A stretch of DNA of 64,000 nucleotides, taken from Magallana gigas. Taxonomy: Eukaryota. The position numbers were made by a program, and so were the translations under genes. Positions 5,112 through 36,172 of the stretch are shown in pieces (the stretch's first letter is position 1; each line of letters opens with the position of its first letter). The stretch lies in the NCBI RefSeq assembly GCF_963853765.1, contig NC_088858.1, forward strand, positions 46,934,001 through 46,998,000. Reading direction: 5' to 3'. Under the pieces are notes generated by a model. The model saw nothing but the letters and a program-made list of their open reading frames with translations. It did not search any database and had not been told where the DNA came from.

Positions 5112-5131
5112 GTCCGTTGTCTGTCGTTGTC

Positions 5132-5172
<41 letters not shown>

Positions 5173-5221
5173 CAAGAACCACTGGACAGATTTCAACCAA
5201 ATTTGGCACAAAGCACCACTA

Positions 5222-5253
<32 letters not shown>

Positions 5254-11200: not shown

Positions 11201-12049
11201 TGGACAATTTGGAGACCCTCTATGCCAATGGGAATTGCTTCACAACTCTTCCTGAAAACTTCAGCTTGCTGTGGCGACTGACAGATCTGTCGTTACGTGG
11301 TGTCATCTGGTTTGTGAGCTCTCCCTCCTACATCATGTCCAGGGACCGCTTCACTGAGCTCCTTGAGGTGCACGGTCTCAGGAGATGGCTGGACGCTCAC
11401 AATGAGGTACGTAAATATAAAACTTAATTATGTCCATAAACAATGAGGTATCAAAATACAGCTTAATGTCACATGACTTTTTGAGGTCTCCAAATATAGC
11501 TTTATGTTTATCTGGTCCCATAGCTTTAACAATGAGGTCTTAAAATATTGTTTTATGTCTGGTCCTTTAACATTAATCCTTTTTTACTTTGTTACTGCAT
11601 GTGGATCTCCTGCACCTAAATCTGAACTAGGAGCAGAAATAATTATGATTTAATTATTTTATTAACATTTTTCTAGAATACAGTACTTTATGACTTTGTG
11701 TAATAAGAATTCAAATAGTGCTTTTTCTCCTAGGACAAAGAGGAGTTATTTAAAGCCTTTGATGAAGATGGCAATGGAATTCTAGACCAGAATGAAATTG
11801 GCAGGCTCAATGCTACGATTTACAACATTTTCCCCAGATTTGGTTACAAAGGAAAGGAATTACCTGGTAAGTTTTTATTTGATAGCATTATAAATTCTCC
11901 ATATGATAAGTTGTATCCAATACTTTTGACATATAACTGAATCAGGAACTGAACTTAATGAATTTTATACTTGTGATTATAAATAATCAAAGAAAAGAAT
12001 CAGTAGAGAAATTCAAGTCTCTTTGAAGCTTTTTAGCTCACCTGAGTCA

Positions 12050-12081
<32 letters not shown>

Positions 12082-15000: not shown

Positions 15001-16113
15001 ATTGCACACTGTAAAATGCAACATCACAAGCGAAAATCAAAGTACACACGTGGCTGTTACAATGCCTCTTCTATTTATATATGAACTTACCCATAGGATA
15101 AAATAGGCTTTTTAAGGTATAAATCACATTTGCAGAGAATGCAAGAAATAAAAAAAAATGTAAATAAAATTAAATCATTATGTTTTGAAAGGTATAGTGA
15201 ACTGTGTCATAACTGCATACAAATTTTCATAACACGTATACGCGTGTTACTCAATTTGTATGCACACACTGCTGCAGTTATGAGACTATATCTTTAAAAA
15301 AATAAAGATTCAGTGCTTAATTGAATTAATATTTGTGTGATTATAGAGATCATGTCCATAACCAGATATTTGTGAACAGTTCTTAATACATGTATTGGTA
15401 TAAAGAAGTCAGATACGGATTAGGGCTTAATTTTTCTAACAAAGGCGATAGAATAGTAAATTTTTTCAGTGTTACAGTGCTTCAAGTTCAAGATTGCAGT
15501 GGAAGGTTGTTAAATTGTTATAAGTTTTGTGGGTATATATCACCCCCAGTTTTTCATCCCTAAGATTTTAAGCACAGCCTTTGTTTTGTATACATGCAGT
15601 GTACAAGTAAATCACTGAAATAATATCTTCACCAACTTAAAAAATATTTAAATGATTCCATTATGATGCTTTAGGTTAAAATTCAAGATGTTACTATGCA
15701 TTAAAAAAAATTATTAATCTAGTGTCTAAAAGTATTGTGTTATTTCTCACACCTGTTTAATTTTGTCCCGTTCTTTATTATGCATTGACTTCTGGAAAAC
15801 TGCAAGACATGCTGTCTTTAAAAGCAACTGGGTTGGGTCAAATTAAAAGCAAAATCTCTGACAACTTGGGTAAAAATAATATTGAGCACAAACAATCCTG
15901 TCTAATTAAATTGTAAATTGTAGTGAATGTGGTATTGATGAAAGCATTTTTGTTTTTAAAAAAAAATTTATTCAACCTATGAATGAATTGTTATTATACA
16001 GGTGTCCAAGGTTGAGCTACCGATGGAGGAACTTAAGGCATCATTCAGTCAGATCGAAGGGTTCTACTTTGTCAGTTCTCTTACTGGACAGGTGTGTATT
16101 TATAGATTAAAGA

Positions 16114-16167: not shown

Positions 16168-19100
16168 TCTGTATTTATGTACATGAACAAATGTATTCTG
16201 TTTACCTTGCATAGAAAAGAGGAAGACATGTAGTTTCTCATCTAATTTTAAATTATATAAGCCATATCCTATTGAAACAATAGTAAATGATACCATGAAT
16301 GATACCCATGTTATTGGCCAGAACACAATGTGTTATTATTATACTATAGGGTAAATTTTTGTCTCAGAAACAAGTGCCTGTGCTATTGGCCCTATATTTT
16401 ATAGATTGAAATAGAAAGAGACAATTCATCTATTATTTAATCCTTATCAGTCTTGAATAAAATGAAATCCATTTAAAATCCATTTTTCTTCCATTTTTTT
16501 TCTGACCATTTTTCCCCCATTACTTGGATTTACACCAGAAATGCTGTACAGAATCAATAGCATTTCTAACCATTTATTTTACCATTTTCATTTAAAACCA
16601 TTGAAACACCATTTAAAACCCATTGAAACACCTTTTTTCCGGGGCAGTTAATATGCAAATTAACCATTTCCTAGCCATTTTAAACCTTAGAGAAAAAATG
16701 AAAAGAAATGGTGTTTTAACAAATGCATTTAATATCCATTTTAAAACATTAAATTACACAATATAGAAATGATTCTAGATAAAATGTTGGATCCTCCCAG
16801 GAAATGTTCAGAAACATGCTCAATACATACATTAAATCGTCTGTGCATTTAATCACTTGCTCACTAAAACAGTTGCCCTTTCTCCTATGAAAACACTTAT
16901 TTTCAGTTTTGTTTTGAATGAGATTAGTTTGGGACTTTGAGTTCAAGTTCTCCACATTCATTTTCGTTGTCCATGCATGCTTGTACTCTGAAAGAAATGA
17001 AAAATGTTACAGATATATATCGATGTAATACAAATTTTCTTTAAGTGTATATTCTATGTTTGCATTTAACTCTAGCTCCTTAATAGAATGAATATCCAAA
17101 GATGGTGTTAATTCATTTGGTGCCTCAAAAATATTCATCAACTTATAACTACATGTATGTCAGATGTCGGTAACAATTTGTTAAATAGAAAAAATATCAT
17201 TTTATCACCCATGTATCAAGAAAAATTTTCAAGGAGGAAGGGGATTGATTGATTATTATGTTGCCAGGGTTGTCCCAATGCAAATTAATAAAAGAAAAAT
17301 AATAATGTTTTATATGAATTTAATAAATTTCAGTTTTCCCAAAGTTCACTCCCCCCTTGATCCGCACAGGTATTTGATCTATATATAACGGGACATTTCG
17401 ACCTGAGCTGGGATGGATCACTGCTTTGACTTGTTTACTTTTACATAAATAAATCCTACATCAATCAAAGTGTGATTTTAATAATTGATCTCATTATAAT
17501 GGTAATATGTTGTCATTCCGCTGTTAAATACAAAAACTTTAAATAACTAAGGTAAACAGGAAATACGATATATGATGCGCGCACATTAGAAAATTCAAAA
17601 ATTTAGGGGGGAAGAGATCATCTTGAAAATAATAAAAGGTTTCATTTTAAATTATATACTAAAATATTTCTAAAGAAACAATAAATATCTTAAACTTACT
17701 GCCAGATGAGAACAATAAAAACCTGTCATGTCATTGTCATTCATTACAATCTTCTTTATGTATGTGATTTTTAAAAAAAGTTTTGGACCTTAACAAAAAA
17801 CGAATTGCTTATTGCTGGTAGGTTTGGTAATATGACTGTCTACAAAAATTTGTTGGGTTGTTAATATCCATAGATGCTTTGGCTTGCCCTACCTTCTATG
17901 ACTGTAGTCTTTGACTTTTGGTATGTTGCAATATGCTGTGATCTTTGAAGGGTCTTGATGATCTGAAGAATAACCTGATTACTTTGACCTTGACCCAGGG
18001 ATACATGGGGGAGTCTATTCCAATGGCCTGGCTGGAGTTGGAGGAAATCATTAAGAAGTAACAAGATACATTAACTTTTCATATATGTACCTCATTTCGA
18101 TTGTAAATTTTTTTGCTTATCAATCAAAACTTATCTATCATGTTTAGATTGAGATCTCTAAGATCATAAGCAGAAATGAAGCTGCCTATATAATGCTCAT
18201 TGTATGTATAATGTATAAAATTAAGGTTTTGTACACTTTAAAAACAAGTTAAAGTAAAATGACTAATTATACCCCCGCTCCGAAGGAGAGGGGGTATACT
18301 GTTTTACCCTTGTGTGTCTGTCTGTCTGTCTGTCCGTCCGTCTGTTTGTCCGTCCGTAACAAAAATTTCTGTCGCATTTATCTCAGCAACTGTTTATCGC
18401 AGATGCTTGAAATTTTAACACAGTATTTGTATAGGCATGCCATATCGTGGGATATATTTTTGTACCAATCAGACGTCAACTTCCTGTTAAATGACGACTT
18501 TGTTTATTTTTAGCAAAAATTTTCAAACAAATTTCCGTCAAAGAATTCTCAGCAACTATTTATCGCAGATGCTTGAAATGTTTACACAGTATTTGTATAG
18601 GCATGCTATATCGTGGGATATATTTTTGTACCAATCAGACGTCAACTTCCTGTTAAATGACGACTTTGTTTATTTTTTGCCAAAATTTTCAAACAAATTT
18701 CCATCAAAGAATTCTCAGCAACTATTTATCGCAGATGCTTGAAATTTTAACACACTATTTGTTTAGGCATGCCATATTGTGGGATATATTTCTGTACCAA
18801 TCGGATGCCAGCTTTCTGTTAAATGTCAACTTTGCTTTTTTTGCATATTCACATCAGAGTGGGGGTATCACTAGTGAGCATTGGCTCACAGATATCTTGT
18901 TCAAGATCATTAATCAAATATTGATTTTTTTTTAGAGAATGTATTCTAATCTAGATCATACATGTATTTTTCAGGCTTAAAACAAAAACAAAGATGGATA
19001 CCATAGAGTATAGTCAGCTTTTTAAGCGAGCTGGTGTGGCAGGCATCGTGAACGAGAAAGAGGTTAGTTCATTATCTGCCAGTGGGTAGATGCGAGGATA

Positions 19101-22100
19101 GATGTGGGTGGTATTTGACCAGTAATAAACATATCAGTTTAATAAGAGAATAAAGCTAGGGTTCATACAGGTCCATCAGAAATTATGGTTTATAAAGGTT
19201 GACTAGATGCATATTTAATGCATTTCAAAAGAGGTAGTTTTATAGTTAGAAAAAAAGATGCAAAACTTAAAATAAAAAATTAAAAAATTGACTGAATGAT
19301 TCAAATATTTTAAAATGTATTATTTTCCCAATTTCATTTTGGTATATCACCTGATAATTTGTTTTGATTAACTTTTCATTCGATTTCCCCAAGTCCCTAA
19401 TATGAATGAGGAAAGATCCTTAATATTGAATAATATACTAAGATAATTTTATCATGCTACCGTTTCAGTTTGCGGAGGCAGTTGCCTTTCTACATGACCT
19501 GGGATCTCTGCAGCACTTTAGCGGTAACGAGTACCTCCATTCCAAAGTGGTGGTCAACCCTCAGTGGATTGTGGATGTCATGGCATGTGTCGTGTCCGTC
19601 AAGGAGAGCCCGATCAAGGTCTGAGTCTGAAACTCTGAAATAAGCTTATATTTAGAAACTCAAAATTGGTTACCGGTAAATATGATAATGGTGGTCTCGT
19701 TAAGATAATGCCTGGTCTCTGTGAGGTCTTTAACCTTTGATTACCTACAATGTATGTTTTAGGCTTAGTGTTGTTCAACATTACCATTATTGAGACAAAT
19801 TGATGATGAACATGACACCATTATTAAAGCAAATGGTTGATAAACATGGCCATATTGAGGCAAATATTACATAACCATGGCCATTATTAAAGCTTGTTCA
19901 TTATAAACACTGCCGTTATTGAGGCATACGTGTAGGTTCATAATCATGGCACTTATTGAGGCTTAGTGTTTATTAACACATCTTTGTTTTCACTTTAGAA
20001 TGGAAGACTCAAACACGAGGATGCAAAGAAAGTCTGGAAAGATTACCCAGAATCCTTGCATCAATGGCTGTTACGGTTGACTGAAGAGTTTGACTTGACT
20101 TTCTGTATTCCTCAAGAAGAGGGTTCTAAAGAAAGAGTGAATCTAGTTCCATGTCTCCTTCCTGAGAGTAAACCGAAGGTAAGAACTTTGCAAATTTATC
20201 AAATAAAGAGTGTAATTACAAATATCAAAATTTAAGATATTCTCATGTTTTTATGAACATCTGCAGTCCATGTTCACTAGAATACATGTGCATGTGTGAT
20301 TAAGGGTTGAGAAGGTTGAATATAATTTATGATCTGTTTAAACAGTTTGAGTGGCCAGAACCAGATAAAAAGAATGGAGTGACTGAGACAAAGATGGTGT
20401 ACATGTTTGACTATCTGCCAGCGGGACTCTTCAACAGGGGACAGGTAAGATGGAAACTTTCTGTCAGAGAGAATTGTAATTAGCTGAATCAATCAGGGGA
20501 ACTCCTTATAGCTTGCTTTGAAGATGAGAAAGAACTTTTTGATTTGTCAAAAGTTGTAAACTTTCTGTAAACCAACTTAATTTATATGCCTGCAAGAAAT
20601 TTTTGTGAGGTTTGCTAGAGTCTTAATGTCACAAATATTTATTGCTGTGTTTTAGTGTTGTATGAATTAAACTGTAGTGTGATATACTTTCGAGTATTTG
20701 TATTATAGTTTACTTTACACTTTTTGTGGTTTACCTAACACTAAAATGTGGTGTACTTTACACTGACTTTAATGCAGTATACATTTTACTGTAGTGAGGT
20801 ATACTTTACATTATTTGTATTAATTGTTTTATATATTTTTTACTGCAGTATGGTACACTTAGAACTTAGCGGCTGTATATGTTATACTTACTTTACATGT
20901 TAGTGTAGTATACTTTACTCTATTTGTAGTGAATTTAATTTACACTTTAGTGTGGTATATTACTTTACACTATAGTGGGGTTTTATAGTGTTTGTTGTGT
21001 GGTATACTGAACACAATGTATAGAGCCCCACCCCCCACCCCCCAACTAAAAAAAAGATGTACAATTTGGTTTGTATGGTATTTGAATTATGGTGAGATGC
21101 TGTAGAATCTTTTAAAACCTGTTTCTTGTTTCAGGTGAGACTTCAGGAATACTCAGACTATTACATTATATGGAAAAAAGGATCATTCTTGAAGAAGGAT
21201 GGACAAATTGCTTTACTGCAGCAAACCAAGTGAGTTCAGTCATAAACATATCATCTTCTGTTTTAAAGTCCTACAGAAACTATAAATTTTTTATATGAGG
21301 TGACTGTAATTTTGTAGAGCTAACATTATTTCAGCATTACAGTTATTATTTCTAGGATATGTTGGGGGTTGTTGTCTTGATATAACTTCAGGTTGTATTG
21401 CAAATTTTAAAGAAGCACAGATGTTCAGTCTGCTGCATTTGTGAGGATCTGGGTTCAAAACCCAGCAGAGGCAATAAGTGTGTTTGTTACACAAATTTTA
21501 AGGTCTATTTTGCTGCATTATCTGTATAGTCCTACTCAACAAGCTTCCCTTTGATTTCAGAGATACCCAGATGGTAGTCAACGTTCAGGGTAAAAATCCG
21601 GAGATTGTCCTGTTCCACATCCACGAGGTGTTCGAGAGTCTGATCCTAGAGGCATACCAGGGGGTGAAGTATGACTTCACCATCCCCTGCCCCGACTGTC
21701 TCAAGCACTCGGCCAAGGACCCCCACATGTTCCTCTCCTCAACCATACGTAGGGCCATAGAGCTGAAGGCACCGTTCCTACAGTGCATGGCCTACTTCCA
21801 TACAATCTCTGTAGTGGACTTGCAGTGTAAGTGAATGCTTTGTCATCATTATCTCTCGTACAAATAACCAGGCTCCAATGACTCTGTTAGTGTATTATAT
21901 TGTATAATTCTGCTTTCAGCCATCATGCCCCCAACCAGTAACAACGATTTTGACGTCCACATCCAGAAGGCAGTCAGTGGGCTACAGGACTTAAGACGCA
22001 ACATGAAAATAGGTCAGGACGATTTATTTTAGGGGGTGGGGTTGTCTTAATTTACAGCAACTAAAGTTTACCCTTTCCAATTGAGGATCTAAACCCATCA

Positions 22101-25100: not shown

Positions 25101-28100
25101 ATAATAATTATGACACACGGAAGTAAATTCTTTTTGTTTACATTAGTTATATAATTTCATCACCTGTACATTCAACAAAAGAACAGAAGCACAAAATTAA
25201 ACTCTGTATGTAAAATACAGTGTATCAACAATTGTTAAAGACTGAAATCAAGTACGTATAATTCGAACATGACAAAAGCCCACCCCAACTGAAGAAAAAA
25301 CCCTTTTCCCCTGAGAACCGTACTTTTTCTTACCTTATTTTTTCTAAAGCTTTAGATCAGTTCTATCTTTAGCACAGTTACCTAGCACTATTGATTGCAT
25401 CGGTGAATAACAACAATACTGATTGCTGACTGAACATTTAAATGGACGTTCCCTACTGCCCTAGAGTTTACTAAAAGGTTTTCTGAACTTCTAACATATG
25501 TACACATGTATATGATTGTTTCGATTAAAGGGACTTTAGTATAGAGAATGGTTCCTGTGATTACCGTATATAGCAAATTGCAATCTAATGTTTTATAAAT
25601 ATAAACACAATGTCCTGGTTGGTTTATGAGACTTTAAAAGCAAGTACATGTATGAGGCATTTACACAAATGAATACTTAAACAATAAAATGCTAATTGTT
25701 TGGTGATTCATGTGGGATATGAAGATGGTAACTCTGCAGAAAATATACATAACCTGTGTTAGCGGGTTATTTAAATTTTTTCTGCAATGATCACTACCTT
25801 TATAACCTGCATGTGTCCTAGGGTCAGGGGTTCAGACCTTGTGTGGGGCCAAAATGGCCAAATAAATGAAAATTTATTTTAAAATCTTAGAAATTACATC
25901 TTTTTTTCTATCCACATATATATATTAGAGAAAAACTATATATTATGCATGGTTATGCTGTTCATAAACCCCTCTATCAAAATTGTAGAAGTCATGGCCC
26001 CTGGGTCTGGGGTTCAGTCCCTAAGGTGGTCGGGTCCAATATGGCCCTATAGTGAACTTGTATTAAATCTTAGAAAATCTTCTCTACTTCATCAGTGAGG
26101 GTAGATATATTGAATGCAAAGTTGTGATGTCCACGGAGCCTTATAACTATATTGTAAAATTCATGACACCTGGGCCAATGTATGGTTCTGGCCTTTGGTT
26201 AAGCCCAATATAGCTATACATAGTGAAAATGGATAAAATTTAAACAGTATTTTCTTTTGTTCTTTCAATGCTTTGAGGGATAAACTAAATGAATTGTTAT
26301 AATTCTAATCCCTGTTTCCTCTGCAAACTCTTGCCTTGCCCCCCCCCCCCCCCCTCCCCCCATCTTTTTATGAAATGATTTTTGCAAACTTGAAATAACA
26401 AAGTGGTGGGAAACAGTCAGAGGCGTCATTGATTAGGGTTTGGACAAAAAATCAAGCTTAACATGCAAACTTGAGACTCCCTGACTGGTCCATCTATGGG
26501 CCCTGGTACTCGAGTGACAGTCAAGGCCTGTGGGCCTTTTCTTATTGAATACTAGCTGTGCATTTGAGTTAAAGACTAGTATAGGGAATTATTAATATTA
26601 ATATCTAAAACATTTGATATGACACTGCATGGCACAAAAATGAACTGTCTATAAACTTGCACAATGTTCAGAAGATACTTTTCAAATTTACTTGGTAATT
26701 AGCACTAAACTGAAATATTAACAGATTACTATACATTTTTATTGTTGATACAGACTTGTTTCTGTCTTACTGTGTGGCCGATGCCCCCGCTGATGATAGG
26801 AATATCATACATCCTGCACAAGTGTACAAAGACTTAAAGAATAATGGATATACATGGTGAGGAAATTTTTTTTGACTTAAGACACTAATGAATGTGTATA
26901 TCAAGCATAACAACACAGTTGAAACTTTGGTATCTTGTACATCCATATCTTAAACTTTATAGATATGAGTTCAAGTTTGGACCAACATTTTCTTATTTTT
27001 TAATAACCTTATGCTTGATGCCTTGAATATTCTTACTGGGTAAATATTTCACTGTTGTTTTTTTTTATCCATTAATGGCTTCAAGACAATGAAATTATAA
27101 CTCTACATGTAAAACTTTGAAAATTCAACCTCACACCTACATCTTGTATACCTAGTACTTGTACATTGTATAAGGTGAAAAGTAACTTTGTATTCATGTA
27201 CAAACAGTTGGTTCCCTGAGGAGAGCAACCAGTACTCTACTGACCTGATGGCTAGAGCTCTGATGGATTCCACCATTTTTGTGGTGTTCATTTCAACCAG
27301 TTATGCAAATGATAGGTCTTGTACAGACATCTTTAAGTATGCCAAGCTGACTTTGGGCAAGCCAATGGTGGTTATTGTAGTGGGTGAGGACAATTTCTCC
27401 TGGAGAAAGACCAACCTCGGGCTGCTTCTCCCTGATGTTGTGAGTATAATAGTAATATCTCTCTCTCTCTCTGCCTCTGTTTGTCTGTCTGTCTGCCTGT
27501 CTGTCTCTCTCTCTCTCTGGTGAGCATACTTATACCTTTTTACACTTAAGTCAAATCCATCTAGGTTAAAATATGCAGTGTTCATGTATAAAAGACATTA
27601 GTGCAATTACTTGTGCTGAATATTTTGGATTAATATGTTTATTATAAAATGTATGATGAATTGGTTCTCACCTTACTTCTGTTCCAGTCTTTTGTCAACA
27701 TGATCAATTCCAAGAAAGACAATTACAACTCAAAGTTCCAGGAACTCCTGGGGAAGTTGGATGAGTTGATGAACTTATCAGTGAAGGCCAAGGACGCCGA
27801 GAGCCCTGAGTGTTTCATAAGCTACTGCTGGAAAAACTCGGCACAGGCCGTCGCCCTAGGAACCAGGTCAGACATTTACAGTGTCACACCCTATCAAGTT
27901 TCATCTAATTCCGTCTAGATCTTGTACAAGGAAACTGCTTTTTTCTTACCAATAATTGATACACAACAGTTTAGCACATTTACTCCATGTAATTTTAGTA
28001 TGGAGTTCTCAGGTGGAATTTTGAATAAATAACAAAATCAAAAAAGACAAAGCCAATTTATGTAAAAATCTGATCTAATTTGAAAATGATCTAAAAGTGG

Positions 28101-31100
28101 GATTTGTAAGTTTTATTTTTCATTTTGTTAATGTTTTTTTTGTACTAAGGATACATTAAAAACATAGTAAGCAAGGCATGCATGGCTATATATCCCAGAT
28201 TCTGTCAGCCATTATTTTGTTTGTTTAATCTATACATTTTTCAACAGATGCAATCTTTCAAAAAAGAAAATTTTTTCAGTTCATATAACATTTAAGGTAT
28301 TTAATGTATAATGAAGGGATATTGAACAATTTTTAATCATTTAAAACTAGTTAAATATGTATTGCTAGATAACTATGAAAGTGAAATGAACCAAATTCAC
28401 ATGACATATAAGAAGCCGGTCATTTTGAACCTTAAAATTTTTTAAAGAGTTATCCCCCCTTTTTTAAAAAAAGAAAATTTTAATTTCGTCAAAATATCTG
28501 CGGTAAATGATTTATTTTATTTCATATTCTAATAAAGAGAAAGTTTATGCATGTATTAACCAAGAGTTTTACAAATTTTAAGTTACTTTTTACAATGTCT
28601 TAATAAAACATACATTGCCCATAGACTTCAATGCAAAATTGAAGGTGTAATATGTTGTACCATAATCAAAATTTTGAGAATTCCTTTGGTGGAGTATTTT
28701 TAATTAATATAACACCTTCAAAATAATATCGTGATTAAGAATATCAGACCATTCATTTATTAGGTAGAAAATGTGGTCGTTATACATCGAATACCTTAAT
28801 TGTGAACAAACAAGTAGGGATATTTAACATCAAGTATTTTTCTTTGCTAGACCCGGTGCAACATCACTTGGGTTTGGAGATCCCAGAGAAATTAAGTCAT
28901 TTTTAGAGAAGAATTCCATCAGGTGCTGGATTGATGTAGAAAGAATAGGAATGGTAAGGGTATGATTAAAGGAGCACAACAGTCTTTGCTGTGGAAAAAT
29001 TACATTTAACATTAGTAGGGGTAAAAACTACATTTCTCAACAACAAAATATCGTATTCTATTTAAATAGATATACAATATATGATGTTAAGACTTATACA
29101 TGTAATGTGGTATTCCATCTTTTTGAGCAATATTTATTGTAGACCAGTATTTTAATGTCATTTAAAATATTCAACAAATGTTTCAAACAAATTTGTAGAA
29201 AAATTGAAACTGAAGTGAAAAATTTCCAAGCTGTTGCTTGTGGCTTAAAAGTCACAATGTAACAATGTTTGTCTTTGAATAAGGAAAAATTAGATAGTCA
29301 ACCCATAATCTCTGCAATACTGCAAACAATTGATGGTTGTGGCTCTGATTTATGCTGTATTACCACAGAACGGGCTGTTTGATGAGATTGCGCGGGGCTT
29401 ACTGGAGTGTAAAGTGGTGGTGGCGTGTGTGTCTGATGATTACGTGGAGTCACCCAGCTGCTGTAAAGAGTTCCGCTACGCCTGCACAGTTCTCAACCTC
29501 CCTCTGGTCATCTGTGTGGTGGGAACTGGGCACAAGTGGAGGCGGAGTGAGGTAGGGTCTTACATATTATGTAACTAAAATGTTAGAGGAGGCAGAGTGA
29601 GGTAGGGTCCTACATGTTATGTAACTAAAATGTTAGAGGAGGCAGATTGAGGTAGGGTCTTACATGTTATGTAACTAATATGTTAGAGGAGGCAGAGTGA
29701 GGTAGGGTCTTACATATTATGTAACTAAAATGTTAGAGGAGGCAGAGTGAGGTAGGGTCCTACATGTTATGTAACTAAAATGTTAGAGGAGGCAGAGTGA
29801 GGTAGGGTCCTACATATTATGTAACTAAAATGTTAAAGGAGGCAGAGTGAGGCAGGGTCTTACATGTTATGTAACTAAAATGTAAGAGGAGGCGATTGAG
29901 GTAGGGTCTTACAAGTTATGTAACTAAAATGTTAGAGGAGGCAGAGTGAGGTAGGGTCTTACATGTTATGTAACTAAAATGTTAGAGGAGGCAGAGTGAG
30001 GTAGGGTCTTACATGTTAAGTAACTAAAATGTAAGAGTAGGCAGAGTGAGGTGGGTCCTTCGTGTTATGTAACTGAAATGTTATAATAGGTATAGTGAGG
30101 TGGGTCCTACATGTTATGTAACTTAAATGTAAGAGTAGGAAGAGTGAGGTAGTATACTTTATTTTATATTATTTGAAATTTATGAATGAATTTATGAATT
30201 GATGAAAGAAGACCGCGCGCGATGCTACCGCTTTTTAGTTCCAAATATACCTATTTTTCATCACATGAGGTTAACATGTATGCTTTGAAATTTTCTTTTT
30301 CATTGATATCAATTGCACTTTCCTCACAGGTATGTGTATTTTTATTAAATATCGTAAAAATGTGCAGCATAAATAACTTGGGGCAGACTATACATGTTAT
30401 ATTATTAAAATATAAATAAATATACTTAAGGCAGAGTAAATTTAGGTAGGATATTCTGAATGTTTTGCATTTAAAATAGAAATAACTTTACAAAACTGAT
30501 ATCTTGCAGTATTATTTTAAGATAATGCTCAAATCCCTGCCTGTACCATTATCTTCATATATCTTGGAGGCCATGCAAGATTGTATGATATTACTTAAGG
30601 TTCTGCTAAAGATATTTTCAGAGTTAATGCAGTGCAAAGCATGTGCAGTAGATCAAAAGGTGCTTCATTTCAATAAATTTTACATGATTAATCATTGTAA
30701 AACTAAAGTCAAATGATTAATGTTAGGTTTTTTTACCAGGAACATTGATTCATTATGGAAGAATTAAAGGACAATGTGAAGGATTGTAAATTATCTTTTC
30801 ATTTTAATTGAGGAGAACTATTTTTGTGAATTAAAGTTTATGGGTTTTCACCATTTAGCTAACCTGTGCTAAAAGATATTGAAAATAGGGTGGCTGCATG
30901 TATTAAAAAGTACTGTTATTGAGATAAATCATTGGACCAAATATACCAATTCTTAAAAGGATGAGACCCAACAACCAATGTGAAGTCACAGTTCTATGTA
31001 GTGAAATGGTGACTGTTTTTAAAAACTCCAATCAAAAGCAACAGCATTAGAAATAATTCTTAATTGTCCTAACCATAAACCCTTTTCAAACTATACAGCT

Positions 31101-34100
31101 ATAATGAAGCTCTGGGAGGGGTGCAAGTTTCTAAAAGGCTGTGTTCTTGTAAACTATACTTTTAAAAAAACAGAACTTTCTAAGAAAACTTCTTGTCATA
31201 GTGAAGATTATATGAATAATCCACTTGGGAACAATTAATCATGTGAGCCTCCTGACCTGTGGGCATCTAGTTTTTAACTGATTGGTAAATTTCTCTTTTT
31301 GGGATCTTTTATATTGAATAGTGAATGCTCAAGTATTATAAATCAAAAGTAGAATTTTATGACAAAATTATATATAGCCAAGAATTATGTCAAGATGTCA
31401 AGAAATGCTCTTAATTTTAGACACATTTGTTCATTGAAAGTGGATTGGGACTGATTTTCCTGCTGAATATTCTAGGTTGCCATGTTGACGATGAACAGCC
31501 CAGTGGTGAGTTTTCAGTTAGAGAGCGAGGAGGCATTCACCAAACTACTGCAGCTTGTGGAAGAGGCTCTAGAATCTAGTAAACAGGTCAAGGATGAAAA
31601 GACAGACACCAAGGAGGGGACATCGGACAAGGAGAGGGCAAATCAGTTCAAGGTCATTTGTTTGAACTTCTGTTATGTAGAGCTACTGTATAGCTGTTTT
31701 CTTGTTGATTAAGAATCTCAATACTGTAAATACCTTTTTAAATGCAAGGATTTAATTTCCACGTAAAATCGTGAGAATTAGGCAGTTCTCCTGGATTTTA
31801 AAATCTAGCTCTTATTTTTCAGACAGTTTTGAGCTACATGAAATCATAACAAAAAATTTGTGCTTGCTATTTTATATTTGATTTGATACAAAATTTACAT
31901 TATCAAAATTGTGAAACATGCACTTAGATGTAGTACATGTGGTGAGAAATTATAACAATTTTAATTACTTGTTTTGTAGGAGCTGTATGAGTTGGCCCAG
32001 AGAAAGTTTTTGAGACAGATAAGAAACTACGCCTCCAGTCAGGAGGTGGCTCCCTACCCTCGACTCTTTGTGGCTGACATCGTACCTTTAGAAGAAAACC
32101 CTCAATCATTTGATACATCCGTGTCTATAGGTACATAGCGGTTCTACTGAATTTAAATCTTAAAATGAAGATAAATATGAAATTTAATGAAGGGGCAATA
32201 TTGGAACTTCTTTATATAAAGCATAAAAGATATGGTTTAATCAATTCTCCGAGTAACTTGGATAACAACTTAAAATATATCTGCAATGAATGGCCAACTA
32301 AAACTACTTTATAAAGTAAAAATAAAATGCCTTGATCATCAGCTTATACAGAAAGGGATTTTTATTTGTTGTTGTTAATTTCAGAGGAAAAACTTGATGA
32401 TAAAGAAGAAAACCAGATAGAGAAAGGAGAAATGGAGATCATTAACTCGGGATATACATCCCGCAGATTCTGTATCCACATCCTGTGCGAATGTGACAAG
32501 GTTTGTACATTTTATATTATCATACTTTCATGTTAAATACTGAAATTTGATTGTTGGTAATCCGTTCTATTACCCTCATCGTTAGCAACACACTTGGCAA
32601 CGGGTAACACAACGAATTGTTACATGCGCGTAAATTCTGCGCGTACGGTTCGTCGTAGAATTCACTTCATTTCTATTTAAAAGCAGTAAAGTTCTCTTTA
32701 AAATTAAGACATTCAGTACAATAAAATAGATAGTGCTTGTTTTGGAAGGTAACTGTTGAAATTGACACCCCTCGAAAACCATTGTCAACCTCCGTGTTGG
32801 TTGACAATGGTTGTCTCGGGGTGTCAATTTCAACAGTTACCCTCCCAAACAGGCACTGTTTATATATTGTTATACTTTCATGTTAAATACTGAAATCTGA
32901 TTGGCTAAGATGCAGTTCATAATCCGTTCTATTACCCTTCGCGTCGGTTGACAATGGTTTTCTCGGGGTGTCAATTTCAACTGTTACCCTCCCAAACAGG
33001 CACTATTTATATAATGTTAACCAGTACTAGTAGAACATGTTGATCATATTATTTTCATTTTATTATACTGCAGAGAATCGTAATAGAGCACATGTAGTAT
33101 TCGCTCATTACATTCATTTTTATCTTCTGCATGTACTGGCAAAAAAAATTTGCAAACAAAACCAGATTTTTCTATAATAAATCTTGAAGAAAAAAGTTAA
33201 GCTTTGTGACAGAGGTACTTTGGGTAAAATATGAGCAAACAAACCAGATTTTCATGCGTAGTAGTTTTTTTATCAAGGGTTTGACATAGTGACATTAGTT
33301 TTGTTAAGTTTAAATTGTATTTAGGTTTTACATACTTGTAGTATCTTAAGCAGTACTCTGTCTACATTTATGCGAAGCTGAATCCAATCTGATCAAAATC
33401 AGATCCTTGATTCGCTCCTTTTTATTTTACTGTTGCTACACATGGATCTGAAGAAACGCCCAGTTGGGGTCACCTCCTGGTGAGCTTTGTTTTGACCAAT
33501 GAAATTGTAAGTTTCATTCCTCAGTAAAGTGTTTTAGAAGTTATGCCAATACAACCTTTGGATTCCTTGAGGACGTTTGATATCAACTTATGCTCCGTCT
33601 TTTTAGCTTGCTGATACCGAAATTTTTTTAGAAAATGTGCCACTCTGCTTTGTCATTCGACTTCATTTTGTTTGTAACCCAAAAATATCCTTTCTTTAAC
33701 ACTTGCTCTGATTGGCTAAAATAACTCATGAATATTCTTAAATCATTGTTCACCAGGAGTTGACCTCAAGAGGAGTTTCTTCAGATCATCATGTAGAGAC
33801 AATAGAAAAAAACAAGGAACGGATCAAGGATCTGATTTTAATCAGATAAAGCTGAATCAATATTTGGCAAAGTGACTTGAGCATTGCTGTTTTTTAATTT
33901 CCAGGGATGGCACAGTGTGACGGAACCCATGATGCTGCCTGAGGACTTTGGGAGAGAGGACCTGACAAAACATGCCCCCTATCTGTCACGCATCACCGCC
34001 ATCATGAAGCACAGCAAGAACTTCATTTTGAACTGTCTGACGGACGATGATGGACAGAACTATATGAAGTGGCTGTTTGAGGTGGGTCCATGTCTCGCTT

Positions 34101-36172
34101 AATGTTGTTACCTCTTGTGTGCGTATATTGTCTTTGAAATTCAGGTTCTTTTTTATGATTGAGCTGTTGAATGTTGTTATTCATTGTGTAGAAATATTGT
34201 TTCTGAAATATGTGTTCTTCCTGATGATTAAGATACATCAGTTCCAAAATTTAGCTTCATTTTTATTGCATCATTCAATTGATTCATATATAATGGAGAT
34301 TAGTTTCCAGTACTGCCCAGATTTAAAGATTGTCTTATAAAAATGTTGTACTAAGCTTATTTGCAAGCTATAGTGAATAATGAATGAAATGTTATCTGGA
34401 AGTTGGTTAATATCTTTTGAAATATAAAACCTTGCAAAACTGAAAGTTTGGTCTTTTAAATGAAACTCACAAACCTGACCTCCACTGGTATGTGAATGGC
34501 TGTAATTAATGATTTAAAACTGAATAATTTTTTATGATTTGTTTAGTCGGCGGAGGCAGTGTTGCCAGACTTTATGAAGGAGTACCACGACCTGCGATAC
34601 CTAGTGATGGAGATGGACTCCCAAAAGTTGTATGGACAACTGTCTCGGTAAGATTGTTTAATAAGATGTAATACTGAAAAGTTACTGTGCTCATCTTTTA
34701 CAAACCTGAAAGTGCAATAAAAATTTTCCTTAAAAAAAGTTTATTGTCAGTGCAGTGATAAAAACGCTCACAGTTTCTGCATACCATCAAAAGCTAAGTA
34801 GGACCTCAAAAAGTTACTATTATAAATGTAATAACTTTGAAATGAATGAATGGCCATACATGTATGTCAAATATCCCAGTTGAAGTTATCTCCTCTATTG
34901 CATTGTACATTCAACATTGTACATTCATATATATATATGTATTCCTTTCACCTGTATTTGAATTCTATTATTGTTATTTCTCCATCATATACATGTGTGG
35001 TACTTAAAGAGCAGAGGTAATGAGACTATATATGTGTCAGAGTAAGTTATGTGGCATTCCTGCTATTCCTGGCTAAAAGGCAAGACTTTAATTTGATTAC
35101 TGTAAATTCTTAATTAAACGTGAGGAATTAATTTTTGCATAAAATTGCAAGAAGCAGTCCTGGCTGATTTTAAAATCCCGCTCTAATTTTTCAGACAGAT
35201 TTTGAGCTATATGAAACCATAACAAAAAATTGGTGCTCGCGATTTTATATTCTTGCTGTTTGATGCAAAACAGCAGAATCGCGGAATTATATAAGTACTC
35301 GCGTAAAATAAGGAATTTACAGTAGTAGAAAGCTTCATTTGTAAGTCTGAGGATTAGGGTTCAAGGTCCAGCAGTGGCAGTATCTGTTTTTGTTAGACAC
35401 GTCTCCTATTCATCCATCATTTGTGTATTCTACAGGTGTCGTCTGTCCAGCGGGAAGGTGATATGGCTGTGTGATGAGCATGCCAAGGAGATGAAGGTCA
35501 CAGTGCTGGCCAAGGATGCAGTGTCCTTGCAGAAGAAGGCCGCCAGCACAGAGCAACCAGAGTTCATTGCTAAATGGCTGCGTGAAATTAATGCAGAAAA
35601 ACTAGCCAAAAAATTCAATTCCGCTGAGAAAGTCAAGAAGAATTTCAATCGTAAGTTTTCAAACTAGAGGTTAATGATTGTAATTTAGATTTTTGTAGTT
35701 ATCATCATTGAGTCATATTTTGATCATATTTTGAGTCTGTATTCTATTATAAATTAAGTTTTCATTCAAAGTTTTTTTGCTTTGCTTAATAAAAAAGAAC
35801 CTAAATAATCTTGATAGATTAAATCTGAGAAAAATTTATTCTGCAGAGGAACTAGTGGATAAAGCAATGCTGCAGGCTAGTTTTGCAAAAGAAGACACAG
35901 AGAATTACAACAGTGACATCCAACAACAAATAATGGCCGACCTGAAAAAGGGTCTGGCTCCAAGTCAGGTGAAAGGACAGGAGAAGCGGACGGTCTTACG
36001 TCATGGGTCAGCGGTCAAAAAGCAGGAGGTGCAGAAGTCAGAGGCCACCATACAACGACATGCCACCACCTCACTAGTGTCACCCCCAAGGTCAATCACC
36101 TCACCCCCCACATCGGGGCAGTCCACCCCCAAAATGAAAAGACCCACCAGTCAAGCCTGCTCTGTTATGTAG
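324..36172 (+). CDS. Multi-exon Roco-family GTPase, 5'-partial (C2-LRR/EF-hand-Roc-COR-TIR-TIR-C-terminal domain-CaaX), ~1924 aa in window
   Basis: Manual splice model, all GT-AG and phase-consistent: join(324..413,544..680,1343..1432,1901..1984,2823..2901,3651..3731,4044..4157,4331..4479,8219..8287,8869..9151,10258..10605,11195..11406,11734..11866,12935..13129,13514..13679,13910..13977,14391..14491,14718..14864,16002..16091,17951..18057,18975..19062,19469..19618,19999..20178,20346..20444,21135..21229,21561..21826,21920..22012,26754..26856,27208..27439,27688..27866,28851..28953,29369..29551,31476..31652,31980..32130,32385..32500,33905..34081,34547..34647,35436..35650,35847..36172). Total 5777 nt; the first exon starts in phase 1, so upstream exons lie outside the window; stop TAG at 36170-36172. 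Confidence 0.9.
774..990. mobile_element. MITE family A (Tc1/mariner-type, TA-flanked)
   Basis: Inverted termini tactgtgaatttctt / aggaatctacagta. Related copies at 2945..3192, 31722..~31900 and 35098..35324. Confidence 0.65.
1608..1828. mobile_element. PIF/Harbinger-like MITE (CWG target duplication)
   Basis: ctg|ggctgcgttttacaaaagaacttacgac ... gtcgtaagttcttttgtaaaacatagacc|ctg-like termini; a reverse-oriented sister copy lies at 37702..37920. Confidence 0.65.
2583..2769. mobile_element. Small MITE
   Basis: Inverted termini aaaagtggttatttaa / ttaaataaccactttt. Confidence 0.5.
2823..9151 (+). CDS. Roco gene exons 5-10: ~258-aa region of unrecognised fold
   Basis: Six exons (775 nt) with canonical splice sites bridge the C2 and LRR regions in frame; I recognise no motif. 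Confidence 0.7.
2945..3192. mobile_element. MITE family A copy
   Basis: Termini tactgtaaattcctta ... taggaatctacagta. Confidence 0.65.
4499..4872. mobile_element. PIF/Harbinger-like MITE, second subfamily
   Basis: ctg|ggctgcgttcaagatcgtagc ... gctacgatcttgaacgcaacc|ctg: TIR ~21 bp, 3-bp CTG duplication. Confidence 0.75.
5061..7977 (+). mobile_element. Helentron-type non-autonomous element (HINE) carrying ~15 monomers of a ~166-bp satellite (Cg170-like)
   Basis: 5' ttttagctcacctgagc; (GTC)n microsatellite; tandem monomers marked by aaaaatcttcttctcaaaaacta every ~166 bp; 3' subterminal inverted repeat gctcaggtgagc and ggcccctgggcc hairpin; T-rich flanks. Confidence 0.85.
10258..13570 (+). CDS. 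Roco gene exons 11-15: leucine-rich repeats interrupted by an EF-hand island
   Basis: LxxLxLxxNxL repeats (LVLTKNNLTSLP, LKIVDLSENILESIP, LQVLNISRNLMNELP, LETLYANGNCFTTLP, LRYLNLSYHGLVHIP). Exon 13 (11734..11866) encodes FKAFDEDGNGILDQNEI. Confidence 0.9.
12031..12715 (+). mobile_element. Short copy of the same Helentron-type element (1-2 monomers)
   Basis: 5' and 3' ends near-identical to those of 5061..7977, with a collapsed central array. Confidence 0.85.
13630..17990 (+). CDS. Roco gene exons 15-20: Roc GTPase domain
   Basis: G1 P-loop GLGEAGKTS (13654..13679 plus 13910), switch I ITDGIDI, G3 WDFAGQ followed by YYNTHHFFLSNRAVY, G4 VGTHID, G5 VSSLTG. Confidence 0.95.
14595..14745 (+). 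repeat. 56-bp triplication of the exon 18 splice acceptor
   Basis: t[g/t]cagtttt-c motif with AG at 14604-05, 14660-61 and 14716-17; ctgtatatagctcacacatgtaa appears twice. Confidence 0.8.
14935..15330. repeat. Dispersed repeat with a central palindrome
   Basis: Palindromic core catacaaattttcataacacg...cgtgttactcaatttgtatg; the same sequence blocks recur rearranged at 55805..56085. Confidence 0.5.
16117..16163. repeat. (GA)n microsatellite
   Basis: Uninterrupted GA run. Confidence 0.95.
17991..22012 (+). CDS. Roco gene exons 20-27: COR domain
   Basis: Typical COR motifs: IPMAWLELE, AVAFLHDLGSLQHF, VVNPQWIVDVMACVV, LVPCLLP, FDYLPAGLFNR, CPDC...LQC...HTISVVDL. Confidence 0.9.
18267..18901 (+). 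mobile_element. Second HINE family (DINE-1/CvA/Pearl-like) with ~3 monomers of 166 bp
   Basis: 5' ttatacccccgc, (GTCT/GTCC)n microsatellite, period 166 (aaatgacgac at ~18490 and ~18656), 3' inverted gtgggggtat and gtgagcattggctcac hairpin. Confidence 0.8.
23006..23068 (-). mobile_element. tRNA-derived SINE-like head
   Basis: Reverse complement ctcggTGGCGCAATGGgtgtagcttcaatctaccaatctgaaggtcccaaGTTCGAATACCgc has Pol III A-box and B-box motifs at tRNA spacing; I could not fold a clean cloverleaf. Confidence 0.45.
23843..24787 (-). CDS. Nested B-box/coiled-coil (TRIM-like, RING-less) protein, ~314 aa
   Basis: The ORF track gives 23843..24853, but its first ~20 codons contain a polypyrimidine/AG acceptor (ttttgttgcag, AG at 24815-24814), so the likely start is ATG 24787. 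B-box1 CDLC...CVEC...CSVCKHHH...HH; B-box2-like CPIH...CDFC...CDMC; helical E/K-rich region; ends PEFVPG...FGKL. It lies wholly inside Roco intron 22013..26753. Confidence 0.8.
   Translation of the reverse strand: MRFLMTLGMTDCCYEHQAQSHGLLQEHTKTALLMKSPSQMSAISGGVNKGDICDLCKKYEKVDNHCVECNKDMCSVCKHHHLRAKVSAKHHPISLKLWESHTGILQCPIHSDSFTTLYCDFCQKMVCDMCGKNLNTNDPRPCFSRSKKEEMMCMLDLYKKGKLTLEGLTFEECHLLEECLIEDQFIQSELVDKVKARIHEEVEENRSLIAGYQEKFEAWYQKICQDFVAKMKKYTKKAENYHGKELIRLYRFAENDMNRPREHVQPLYNIPSPEFVPGKPGVGSVEESFGKLVYDDLNIQWRKHIMLYNLLCAN
25770..26545 (+). mobile_element. Degenerate Helentron-like element
   Basis: Decayed monomers (tcatggcccctgggtc, ttaaatcttagaaaatcttct) and a 3' end ctcgagtgacagtcaaggcctgtgggcct resembling HINE hairpin termini. 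Confidence 0.45.
26754..27760 (+). CDS. Roco gene exons 28-30: TIR domain 1 (catalytic Glu position is Ile)
   Basis: DLFLSYC...DLKNNGYTCWFP...MARALMDSTIFVVFISTSYANDRSCTDIFKYAKLTLGKPMVVIVV follows the TIR/TIR_2 pattern. Confidence 0.8.
27458..27517. repeat. Compound (CT)n/(GTCT)n microsatellite
   Basis: Visible directly in the sequence. Confidence 0.85.
27808..31570 (+). CDS. Roco gene exons 30-33: TIR domain 2 (catalytic Glu retained)
   Basis: ECFISYCW...FLEKNSIRCWIDVERIGMNGLFDEIARGLLECKVVVACVSDDYVESPSCCKEFRYACTVLNLPLVICVV; the Glu codon is 29468..29470. Confidence 0.88.
29537..30152 (+). repeat. 50-bp minisatellite, ~13 copies, starting at the exon 32 splice donor
   Basis: Unit aggaggcagagtgaggtagggtcctacatgttatgtaactaaaatgttag; the donor position recurs at 29552, 29602, 29652 ... 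30149. Confidence 0.95.
31980..35490 (+). CDS. Roco gene exons 34-38: Roco C-terminal (post-COR) domain
   Basis: Motif series YPRLF, HILCE, GWH, HAPYL, LRYLVMEMD, YGQLSR, GKVIWLCDEH resembles the tail I recall from kinase-less Roco proteins. Recall only, not searched. Confidence 0.6.
32516..33013. mobile_element. Palindromic non-autonomous element, full plus partial tandem copy
   Basis: ttatactttcatgttaaatactgaaat starts both 32518 and 32871; internal hairpin ggtaactgttgaaattgacacccc...ggggtgtcaatttcaacagttacc. Confidence 0.6.
33378..33855. mobile_element. MITE with ~35-bp TIRs
   Basis: atctgatcaaaatcagatccttgattcgctcctt / aaggaacggatcaaggatctgattttaatcagat. Confidence 0.65.
35098..35324. 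mobile_element. MITE family A copy
   Basis: Termini tactgtaaattctta ... taaggaatttacagta. Confidence 0.65.
36158..36172 (+). other. C-terminal CaaX prenylation motif CSVM-stop
   Basis: TGC TCT GTT ATG TAG, preceded by the basic stretch PKMKRPTSQA. Confidence 0.75.

What the first reader, a model, noticed from the sequence alone, without database searches (positions are those of the whole stretch)
26754..29551. Asymmetric TIR pair: TIR2 keeps the NADase catalytic glutamate, TIR1 has Ile there
Seen: ungapped alignment of TIR1 YANDRSCTDIFKYA with TIR2 YVESPSCCKEFRYA puts Ile (27329..27331) opposite Glu (29468..29470). Established: SARM1, plant NLR and bacterial Thoeris TIRs need this alphaC Glu for NAD+ cleavage and become active on self-association. 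Inference: COR-driven dimerisation could switch on TIR2 NADase or cyclic-ADPR synthesis, with TIR1 acting as a scaffold or pseudo-enzyme. That would be a GTP-controlled NADase in an animal.
Basis: partly seen in the sequence, partly recalled or inferred. Interest (0 to 1): 0.78.

Follow-up and report, generated by a model that had tools for sequence, protein, structure and literature searches.

The report
Oyster Roco GTPase with lopsided TIR pair
An expressed oyster Roco-GTPase gene carries two adjacent TIR domains, the second keeping every sequence hallmark of NAD-cleaving TIR enzymes and the first having lost them all, a pattern conserved across invertebrates; enzyme activity itself is unproven.

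Summary
Ile (27329-27331) in TIR1 lies opposite Glu (29468-29470) in TIR2. Both TIRs are in one spliced mRNA with the COR exon upstream, in RNA contigs of three runs. The gene is the Magallana gigas protein K1PB18 (98.5% identical): C2, LRR, EF-hand, Roc, COR-A, COR-B, TIR, TIR and a conserved C-terminal domain.

The asymmetry is a family trait. In 45 Roco tandem-TIR proteins from molluscs, annelids, a brachiopod and amphioxus, TIR2 has the Glu, the BB-loop Asp and the betaA Ser in 45/45. TIR1 has Glu in 0/45 (L/M/I/V instead) and the BB-loop Asp in 1/45. All 19 invariant columns lie in TIR2. The TIR2 Glu aligns with the catalytic Glu of Cat1 and RPP1, but also with the Glu of TLR6.

The NADase reading is only partly supported. 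A 2026 preprint (Hurieva et al.) expressed two isolated TIR2-type domains of this family and detected no cADPR isomer or NAD+ depletion. Its RUN1, RPP1 and RPS4 controls were also negative, so that result is weak. The fold does not separate enzyme TIRs from scaffold TIRs. The architecture was noted in 2016 and 2022; I found no description of the built-in pseudo-TIR plus competent-TIR pair. It resembles the plant RRS1/RPS4 pair, joined in one chain.

The parts
26754..26856 (+). TIR1 exon 1 (betaA 'DLFLSYC' to alphaA). This exon is missing from the public K1PB18 gene model.
   Evidence: AG/GT borders. Joined to 27207 in RNA contigs of 3 runs, with an upstream overhang that matches the COR-B exon end. 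Absent from P0136.
27208..27439 (+). TIR1 exon 2 (betaB to betaD). It holds the degenerate BB loop 'CWFPEES' and the Glu-equivalent Ile.
   Evidence: Pfam TIR_2 E=6e-4. 121 homologues found with this exon. Splice junctions.
27329..27331 (+). ATC = Ile at the position of the catalytic Glu in TIR1.
   Evidence: In 45 family members this column is L20 M12 I8 V3 A1 F1, never Glu.
27688..27866 (+). Exon with the end of TIR1, a long linker helix, and TIR2 betaA 'CFISYCW'. The conserved Ser codon is at 27820-27822.
   Evidence: The AF2 model of the Pinctada homologue has a 27-residue helix (126-152) running into TIR2 betaA. The Ser is 45/45.
28851..28953 (+). TIR2 exon (alphaA, betaB, start of the BB loop 'CWIDVERIGM'). 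The BB-loop Asp codon is at 28933-28935.
   Evidence: The Asp is 45/45 and the Trp 45/45. Splice junctions.
29369..29551 (+). TIR2 exon (rest of the BB loop, alphaB, betaC, alphaC with the Glu, betaD).
   Evidence: Pfam TIR_2 E=5.9e-7, above the gathering score. Splice junctions.
29468..29470 (+). GAG = the canonical alphaC (catalytic-position) Glu of TIR2.
   Evidence: Glu in 45/45. Aligned with the Glu of Cat1, RPP1 and TLR6.
31476..31652 (+). Exon with TIR2 betaE and alphaE and an acidic/basic linker.
   Evidence: The downstream overhang of the RNA contigs matches its first bases.
31980..36172 (+). Six exons (31980-32130, 32385-32500, 33905-34081, 34547-34647, 35436-35650, 35847-36172). They encode a conserved C-terminal domain of unknown fold and a tail ending in CSVM and the stop codon.
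   Evidence: Found in about 50 family members. Invariant C, E, W, H and L. Confident model without a PDB neighbour.
13513..16091 (+). Roc GTPase exons (P-loop GLGEAGKT, DFAGQ, GTHID).
   Evidence: The G-motifs are invariant in 29 family members.
17948..22012 (+). COR-A and COR-B exons. The last one ends at 22012 and splices to TIR1.
   Evidence: Pfam COR-A and COR-B. Collinear tblastn. RNA overhang.
10251..13128 (+). LRR, EF-hand and LRR exons upstream of Roc.
   Evidence: Pfam LRR_8 and EF-hand. Collinear with P0004, P0012, P0013 and P0136.

Best explanation
The window holds the 3' two thirds of an expressed oyster Roco gene, essentially UniProt K1PB18 of Magallana gigas. Its Roc-COR GTPase core is followed by a rigidly linked pair of TIR domains with divided roles.

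TIR2 keeps the full sequence signature of NAD+-processing TIRs (betaA Ser, BB-loop Asp, alphaC Glu). I take it to be the catalytic or signal-generating half. [quoted passage not shown] I take it to be a non-catalytic partner that supplies an interface to position or restrain TIR2. That is the role the Glu-less sensor TIR plays for the executor TIR in plant RRS1/RPS4 pairs, here fused into one chain.

Activation would come from a change of oligomeric state or conformation driven by the Roc nucleotide cycle, possibly with Ca2+ input through the EF-hand and C2 domains.

Shown: the gene structure, its expression, the asymmetry, its family-wide conservation and the homology of the Glu. Inferred: catalysis, the partner role of TIR1 and control by GTP.
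For: Exon structure and co-transcription. Identity with K1PB18. Collinear Roco-TIR-TIR homologues in molluscs, Lingula, annelids and amphioxus.

In 45 tandems, TIR2 has Ser, Asp and Glu in 45/45 each, while TIR1 has Glu 0/45, Asp 1/45 and Ser 24/45. All 19 invariant columns lie in TIR2. Mean pairwise identity is 52% for TIR2 and 34% for TIR1.

The best PDB hit of the TIR2 profile is the NADase Cat1 (E=1.7e-7), with Glu on Glu; plant RPP1 aligns the same way. TIR2 aligns with SARM1 TIR 561-700 at Z 15.4, rmsd 2.5 A and 20-21% identity, the highest identity among the top hits.

Glu, BB-loop Asp and Gly, and the Ser are the published NADase determinants. Animal non-SARM1 TIRs with this Glu can make cADPR, including ones with S or N instead of Trp four residues before the Glu. 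The Roc P-loop, DxxGQ and THxD motifs are invariant.
Against: Two isolated TIR2-type domains of this family gave no cADPR, 2'cADPR, 3'cADPR or NAD+ depletion in E. coli (Rotaria A0A818LFL5 and Dimorphilus A0A7I8VYT1 = P0143). Only 12 of 61 Glu-bearing animal TIRs were active in that screen. TLR2 and IL-1R9/10 have the Glu without detected activity.

The best structural neighbours of TIR2 by Z are scaffold TIRs (Hydra TRR-2 16.7, MyD88 15.8), ahead of SARM1. SARM1 is not among the sequence-profile hits at E<=1. The relative orientation of the two TIRs is only moderately confident (pTM 0.68), and I could not inspect the interface.
Confidence: 0.45

Rival explanations
1. Both TIRs are protein-interaction modules, as in MyD88, TLR and IL-1R signalling. 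The Roco protein would be a GTP-regulated adaptor or hub that recruits other TIR proteins. The TIR2 Glu and its neighbours would be conserved because they form a binding surface or stabilise the fold, not because they catalyse anything.
For: The top structural neighbours of TIR2 are scaffold TIRs: TRR-2, MyD88 and IL-1RAcPb. A single-exon search finds only MyD88, weakly. The same Glu is present in TLR1/2/6, and TLR2 and IL-1R9/10 are inactive. Two family TIR2 domains were inactive in the screen. Aplysia workers filed such proteins under TLR- or MyD88-like signalling.
Against: The three residues that define the NADase pocket (Ser, BB-loop Asp, Glu) are jointly invariant in 45/45 and jointly lost in TIR1. 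That pattern is expected for an active site. There is no Pro in the TIR2 BB loop where TLR-type box 2 has one; this is my reading and of the family consensus. The screen also missed the known enzymes RUN1, RPP1 and RPS4.
Confidence: 0.35
2. TIR2 is an enzyme, but its substrate or product lies outside the panel tested so far. Candidates are ADPR-derived conjugates, base-exchange products, NADP+ or nucleic-acid substrates. The negative screen would then reflect what the assay could detect.
For: Hurieva et al. state that pRib-AMP/ADP, di-ADPR, ADPR-ATP, N7-cADPR and His-ADPR were not measured. The pocket residues are invariant.
Against: The NAD+ depletion column is also blank for rows 136 and 137, so there was no bulk NAD+ use in E. 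coli. Nothing here points to a specific alternative substrate.
Confidence: 0.12
3. The asymmetry is an artefact: a mis-spliced model, a pseudogene, or a chance alignment.
For: The public K1PB18 model lacks the first TIR1 exon.
Against: RNA contigs from three runs carry all five exons in frame. The frame is open to a conserved C-terminus. The same pattern holds in 45 homologues across phyla.
Confidence: 0.01

Closest known systems
TIR2-type domains of Rotaria sp. A0A818LFL5 and Dimorphilus gyrociliatus A0A7I8VYT1 (Hurieva et al., bioRxiv 10.64898/2026.04.20.719644, Table S4 rows 136-137)
   Same: Same family and same domain position. The Dimorphilus protein is P0143, a hit of my family search. 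Both share the 'FISYCW', 'DPR', 'ACVSDEY' and 'NC.ME/NEF' motifs, and the authors' structural alignment calls the same Glu. Their Table S3 gives LEU for the other Dimorphilus TIR and MET versus GLU for the two TIRs of Capitella R7TDS1.
   Different: They were tested as isolated TIR2 domains only, and no activity was detected. The word 'tandem' does not occur in the paper's main text, so the pairing and its asymmetry are not discussed. The oyster protein itself is not in their tables.
Plant paired TIR-NLRs RRS1 (sensor) / RPS4 (executor), PMC13732033
   Same: [quoted passage not shown] The partner keeps them and carries the NADase activity. The inactive TIR is proposed to restrain the active one. 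TIR1 and TIR2 here show the same three differences.
   Different: The plant pair is two separate NLR polypeptides with NB-ARC switches. Here the two TIRs are fused in one chain behind a Roc-COR GTPase, in animals. Activity is shown for RPS4/RRS1 and not here.
SARM1 TIR domain (animal NAD+ hydrolase, E642)
   Same: TIR fold at Z 15.4, rmsd 2.5 A and 20-21% identity over 561-700. Shared 'FISY' betaA with the Ser567 equivalent, an 'IDVE(K/R)' start of the BB loop, and the alphaC Glu. These motif matches are my reading.
   Different: No ARM or SAM domains. No significant sequence-profile match. Trp638 is replaced by Ser/Asn, and the SARM1-specific insert before alphaC is absent. Activity is unknown.
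Roco proteins MFHAS1/MASL1, LRRK and bacterial CtRoco
   Same: LRR, Roc, COR-A and COR-B core with intact G-motifs. The amphioxus relative is even annotated MFHAS1.
   Different: No kinase; the output domains are two TIRs plus a novel C-terminal domain. In CtRoco, GTP drives monomerisation (titles and abstracts), so the direction of any oligomeric switch here is open.
Invertebrate LRR-(EF-hand)-ROC-COR-TIR proteins noted in the Aplysia immunome (PMC9334734) and actiniarian 'NG1' (PMC5094078)
   Same: Same architecture. Aplysia LOC101848126 is family hit P0141. The 2016 paper already mentions a C. gigas protein that combines C2, GTPase and TIR_2 domains.
   Different: Those papers list domain architectures only. 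They give no residue-level analysis, no distinction between the two TIRs and no enzymatic hypothesis.
Cat1, CRISPR-associated TIR NADase (PDB 9mud)
   Same: Best solved-structure sequence match of the TIR2 profile (E=1.7e-7), with the Glu aligned.
   Different: Bacterial, a single TIR, activated by cyclic oligoadenylate. Only about 60 residues align.

Membership tests
NAD+-processing (enzymatic) TIR domains | TIR (flavodoxin-like) fold | tested here: met
   The AF2 model of the tandem has pLDDT 90.2. Both halves align with solved TIRs at Z 14-16.7. Pfam TIR_2.
NAD+-processing (enzymatic) TIR domains | Catalytic Glu on helix alphaC | tested here: met
   TIR2: Glu at 29468-29470, 45/45 in the family, aligned with the Glu of Cat1 and RPP1. 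TIR1: not met, with Ile here and no Glu in 45.
NAD+-processing (enzymatic) TIR domains | BB-loop Asp and Gly needed for activity (PMC13732033) | tested here: met
   TIR2: Asp 45/45 (codon 28933-28935); Gly at either of two loop positions in 30/45. TIR1: Asp 1/45, and a loop two residues shorter by my reading.
NAD+-processing (enzymatic) TIR domains | betaA Ser next to the Glu (SARM1 S567 equivalent) | tested here: met
   TIR2 45/45; TIR1 24/45. The requirement is described.
NAD+-processing (enzymatic) TIR domains | Trp four residues before the Glu (WxxxE) | tested here: not met
   TIR2 has Ser here and N/T/S in the family. This is not disqualifying: active animal TIRs in Table S4 rows 144-146 have S or N there.
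NAD+-processing (enzymatic) TIR domains | Glu-dependent NAD+ cleavage or cyclisation | not testable with these tools
   Published tests of two isolated orthologous TIR2 domains were negative, but so were the RUN1, RPP1 and RPS4 controls.
Roco (Roc-COR) GTPases | Roc domain directly followed by COR-A and COR-B in one polypeptide | tested here: met
   Pfam on window exons and on P0136. The RNA overhang links COR-B to TIR1.
Roco (Roc-COR) GTPases | Intact G1 (GxxxxGKT/S), G3 (DxxG) and G4 (THxD) motifs | tested here: met
   GLGEAGKT, DFAGQ and GTHID in the window. Invariant in 29 relatives. Nucleotide binding itself was not tested.
Scaffold TIRs of TLR / IL-1R / MyD88 type | Box 2 BB-loop Pro (RDxxPG-type) used for heterotypic TIR contacts | tested here: not met
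   The TIR2 BB loop 'IDVERIGMNGLF' has no Pro. This was a reading only, with no formal model, so it is weak evidence.
Paired sensor/executor TIRs (plant RRS1/RPS4 type) | Two different TIRs acting together, one without Glu and BB-loop Asp, one with them | tested here: met
   for the residues and for the definition. A functional partnership was not tested. This is an analogy of mechanism, not homology of the whole proteins.

The most novel reading that the evidence does not exclude
The tandem is an obligate heterodimeric TIR enzyme built into one chain. On this reading the degenerate TIR1 is required in cis to open or shape the TIR2 pocket, which would explain why isolated TIR2 domains were silent in the 2026 screen. 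The Roc GTPase cycle would gate production of an NAD-derived messenger such as cADPR at a membrane, through the C2 domain and the CaaX tail. Ca2+ would feed back through the EF-hand and C2 domains. That would be a GTPase-gated TIR signalling enzyme conserved from lophotrochozoans to amphioxus and lost in vertebrates.
Probability: 0.22. Interest if true: 0.85.

Novelty: new variant of a known kind. Interest (0 to 1): 0.55.

Why it matters
Until 2026 SARM1 was the only accepted TIR enzyme in animals, and a recent preprint argues that catalysis is widespread. This family offers a clean natural experiment. Two TIRs of common origin sit side by side for over 500 million years, one under near-absolute constraint on exactly the pocket residues and the other freed from it. 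If TIR2 is active only together with TIR1, that would show that the asymmetric 'helper plus enzyme' logic of plant TIR-NLR pairs also exists in animals. It would also link Roco GTPases, the LRRK2 family, to NAD-derived signalling. If TIR2 is inactive, the family becomes a strong case that the 'catalytic' Glu-Asp-Ser triad can be conserved for non-enzymatic reasons. That would caution against reading enzyme function from the Glu alone.

Tried and rejected
- Single-exon search against PDB sequences gave only weak MyD88 hits (E about 0.2). It was uninformative until replaced by a family profile.
- Foldseek and VIA-align on the tandem model: enzyme and scaffold TIRs score alike, so the fold cannot decide function. 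I could not inspect the TIR1-TIR2 interface, the Glu orientation, or a residue-level superposition on SARM1 E642.
- I considered the missing Trp of WxxxE as evidence against catalysis and rejected it. Active animal TIRs in Table S4 have S, N or Y there.
- I considered a shifted acidic residue in TIR1 (the Asp just before the Ile). That position varies between D, N, A, Q, K and E in relatives, so it is not a displaced catalytic residue.
- C-terminal domain: no Pfam hit, no PDB neighbour, and hhalign against the family's own Roc-COR is not significant (probability 0.2%). There is only an ESM-Atlas shape match to cyanobacterial Roc-COR proteins (TM 0.52). I leave it as a lead.
- Literature: nothing for K1PB18, and no paper listed holds 'ecTIR-DC' or 'tandem TIR'. 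I could not tell from the text which protein in Fig. 3A of Hurieva et al. carries Roc and COR. No active row of the Table S4 parts I read (1, 2, 4, 5) shows the TIR2 motifs, and the motif search of the whole table found only rows 136-137.
- The search for homologous proteins did not return a protein flagged as the window's own. The near-identical K1PB18 (P0136) turned up when I compared the C-terminus.


Full report
**What is there.** The window is AT-rich animal DNA with short exons. On the + strand, stop-free segments carry C2, LRR, EF-hand, Roc, COR-A, COR-B and TIR_2 matches in that order. Using homologues as guides I built a spliced model from the last COR-B exon (ends 22012) to a stop at 36170-36172. 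It has twelve further exons, all with AG/GT borders, and encodes 687 residues.

The five exons inside the finding are 26754-26856, 27208-27439, 27688-27866, 28851-28953 and 29369-29551. TIR2 ends in the next exon, 31476-31652.

**Expression and gene identity.** RNA-derived contigs from three runs (3925, 4729 and 1461 nt) join the five exons at these borders. They continue upstream into the COR-B exon and downstream into the exon at 31476. Stranded raw reads fit a + strand transcript, and no variant touches either codon.

The model is 98.5% identical over 652 residues to P0136, which is UniProt K1PB18 of Magallana gigas (2839 aa). Residues 998-2839 of that protein map collinearly onto the window. 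The window is therefore the Pacific oyster or a very close relative, and the gene starts upstream of the window. K1PB18 lacks the first TIR1 exon that the RNA contigs contain. Pfam on P0136 gives LRR, EF-hand, Roc (1667-1784), COR-A, COR-B and two TIR_2 stretches.

**The family.** A search of 1.8 billion representative proteins with the TIR1 exon found 121 proteins, most with two TIR stretches. A second search returned 39 proteins. Most are full-length Roc-COR proteins, from scallops, pearl oyster, clams, mussels, gastropods including Aplysia LOC101848126, Lingula and annelids. An amphioxus member annotated MFHAS1 came from the cluster look-up.

In all of these, the first TIR matches the window's TIR1 best and the second matches TIR2 best. 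A C-terminal domain of about 210 residues follows in about 50 of them.

**The asymmetry is a family trait.** Across all TIR domains of the 121 hits, the Glu column holds Glu in 74 of 86 TIR2-type domains with a residue there. TIR1-type domains mostly hold L, I, M or V.

I then aligned 45 Roco-type tandems (A3):
- TIR2 has the betaA Ser, the BB-loop Asp and the alphaC Glu in 45/45 each.
- TIR1 has Glu in 0/45 (L20 M12 I8 V3 A1 F1), Asp in 1/45 and Ser in 24/45.
- All 19 invariant columns lie in TIR2.
- Mean pairwise identity is 52% for TIR2 and 34% for TIR1.

By my reading of the window and Pinctada sequences, the TIR1 BB loop is also two residues shorter. In more distant tandem-TIR proteins outside this closest set, the first TIR still has Glu or Gln. 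In Trichoplax B3S268 both TIRs are scored Glu. So the loss in TIR1 looks secondary.

**Is it the catalytic Glu?** A profile of 26 TIR2 domains searched against PDB sequences hits the bacterial NADase Cat1 best (E=1.7e-7), then plant TIRs including RPP1, then TLR6, TLR1 and MyD88. The printed alignments put the invariant Glu on the Glu of Cat1, RPP1 and TLR6.

Hurieva et al. (bioRxiv 10.64898/2026.04.20.719644) aligned predicted TIR structures to ThsB E85. For the Dimorphilus homologue they name residue 1833, which I verified is the Glu of the same motif in P0143.

The AF2 model of the tandem from the Pinctada homologue (74% identical to K1PB18 over the tandem) is confident, with pLDDT 90.2 and pTM 0.68. 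A 27-residue helix links the two domains. TIR2 aligns with SARM1 TIR 561-700 at Z 15.4 and 20-21% identity. It aligns equally well or better with Hydra TRR-2, MyD88 and IL-1RAcPb. TIR1 aligns best with plant TIRs. The homology of the Glu is therefore sound, but the fold does not tell enzymes from scaffolds.

**Is TIR2 an enzyme?**

For: the residues named in the literature as required for TIR NADase activity are the alphaC Glu, the BB-loop Asp and Gly, and the betaA Ser. The Glu, Asp and Ser are invariant in TIR2, and the Glu and Asp are essentially absent from TIR1. Animal TIRs outside SARM1 can make cADPR in a Glu-dependent way, including one from M. gigas. Some active ones have the same 'S/N-C-x-x-E-(L/F)-x-Y-A' context without Trp.

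Against: the same preprint expressed two isolated TIR2-type domains of this family (rows 136 and 137) and recorded no activity, no cADPR isomer and no NAD+ depletion. Only 12 of 61 animal TIRs were active, and TLR2 and IL-1R9/10 carry the Glu without activity.

Mitigating: the known enzymes RUN1, RPP1 and RPS4 were also blank in that assay. The authors stress that isolated domains miss oligomerisation-dependent activation and that several products were not measured. TIR1 was absent from the tested constructs.

**Mechanism and control.** The closest functional analogy is the plant RRS1/RPS4 pair. There the sensor TIR lacks the Glu and the BB-loop Asp and has a shorter loop. The executor TIR keeps them and carries the NADase activity, and the inactive TIR is proposed to restrain it. 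Here the two are fused.

The Roc G-motifs are invariant in 29 relatives, and the Roc-COR core has 65% mean column identity, so a working GTPase is likely. The direction of the switch is open. For bacterial Roco, the titles and abstracts describe a monomer-dimer transition during GTP turnover and GTP-driven monomerisation. 'COR-driven dimerisation turns TIR2 on' is therefore not a safe inference. The C2, EF-hand and CSVM tail suggest Ca2+ and membrane input, but this is inference only.

**What is known already.** The architecture has been noted before. Aplysia LRR-(EF-hand or MBT)-ROC-COR-TIR proteins were described in 2022. Actiniarian 'NG1' was described in 2016, with a remark on a C. gigas protein combining C2, GTPase and TIR_2 domains. 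Per-domain residues at the catalytic position for relatives are in Table S3 of the 2026 preprint. I found no text that discusses the tandem or its asymmetry ('tandem' occurs 0 times in that paper; no paper for K1PB18).

**Verdict.**
- The enzymatic and GTP-gating interpretation stays a reasonable but unproven hypothesis, with one weak published negative.
- I put a catalytic TIR2 with a pseudo-enzyme TIR1 at about 0.45, a purely scaffolding pair at about 0.35, and unusual chemistry at about 0.12.

Noticed in passing
window 29538-30152: A 50-bp minisatellite of 12.4 copies (91% matches) starts 14 nt before the end of the TIR2 exon. It therefore repeats the exon end plus the GT donor about twelve times. 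RNA contigs of three runs use only the first donor.
   Followed up: partly
window 31980-35650 (exons of the C-terminal domain): A domain of about 210 residues after TIR2 is conserved in about 50 relatives, with invariant C, E, W, H and L and nearly invariant C..C..H residues that could be a metal site. The AF2 model is confident (pLDDT 84.5) and has no PDB neighbour. The best ESM-Atlas shape match is cyanobacterial Roc-COR proteins (TM 0.52). hhalign against the family's own Roc-COR is not significant. It may be an undescribed domain.
   Followed up: partly
window 23843-24853, minus strand: An intact 336-aa ORF with a weak B-box zinc-finger match (E=4.9e-5, just under the Pfam cut-off) lies inside the 4.7-kb intron between the COR-B and TIR1 exons. 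It may be a nested TRIM-like gene.
   Followed up: partly
window 26754-26856: The public protein K1PB18 (P0136) lacks this exon (TIR1 betaA), although RNA contigs include it. The database model of TIR1 is therefore truncated.
   Followed up: yes
window 28252-28833 (intron between TIR2 exons): This stretch has RNA contig depth up to about 290, against 8-18 on the exons, with many loose ends. It is probably a transcribed repeat or mobile element present elsewhere in the genome.
   Followed up: no
window 1-9153 and upstream of the window: K1PB18 residues 998-1359 map to window 287-9153 (C2 and further exons), and residues 1-997 lie upstream of the window. A first-stage note describes another Roco-like unit with a degenerate Roc there. 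The protein may hold two Roc-COR units, or two genes may be fused in the public model.
   Followed up: no
window 27458-27519: A TCTCTCTG microsatellite of 8 copies begins 19 nt after the donor of the main TIR1 exon.
   Followed up: no
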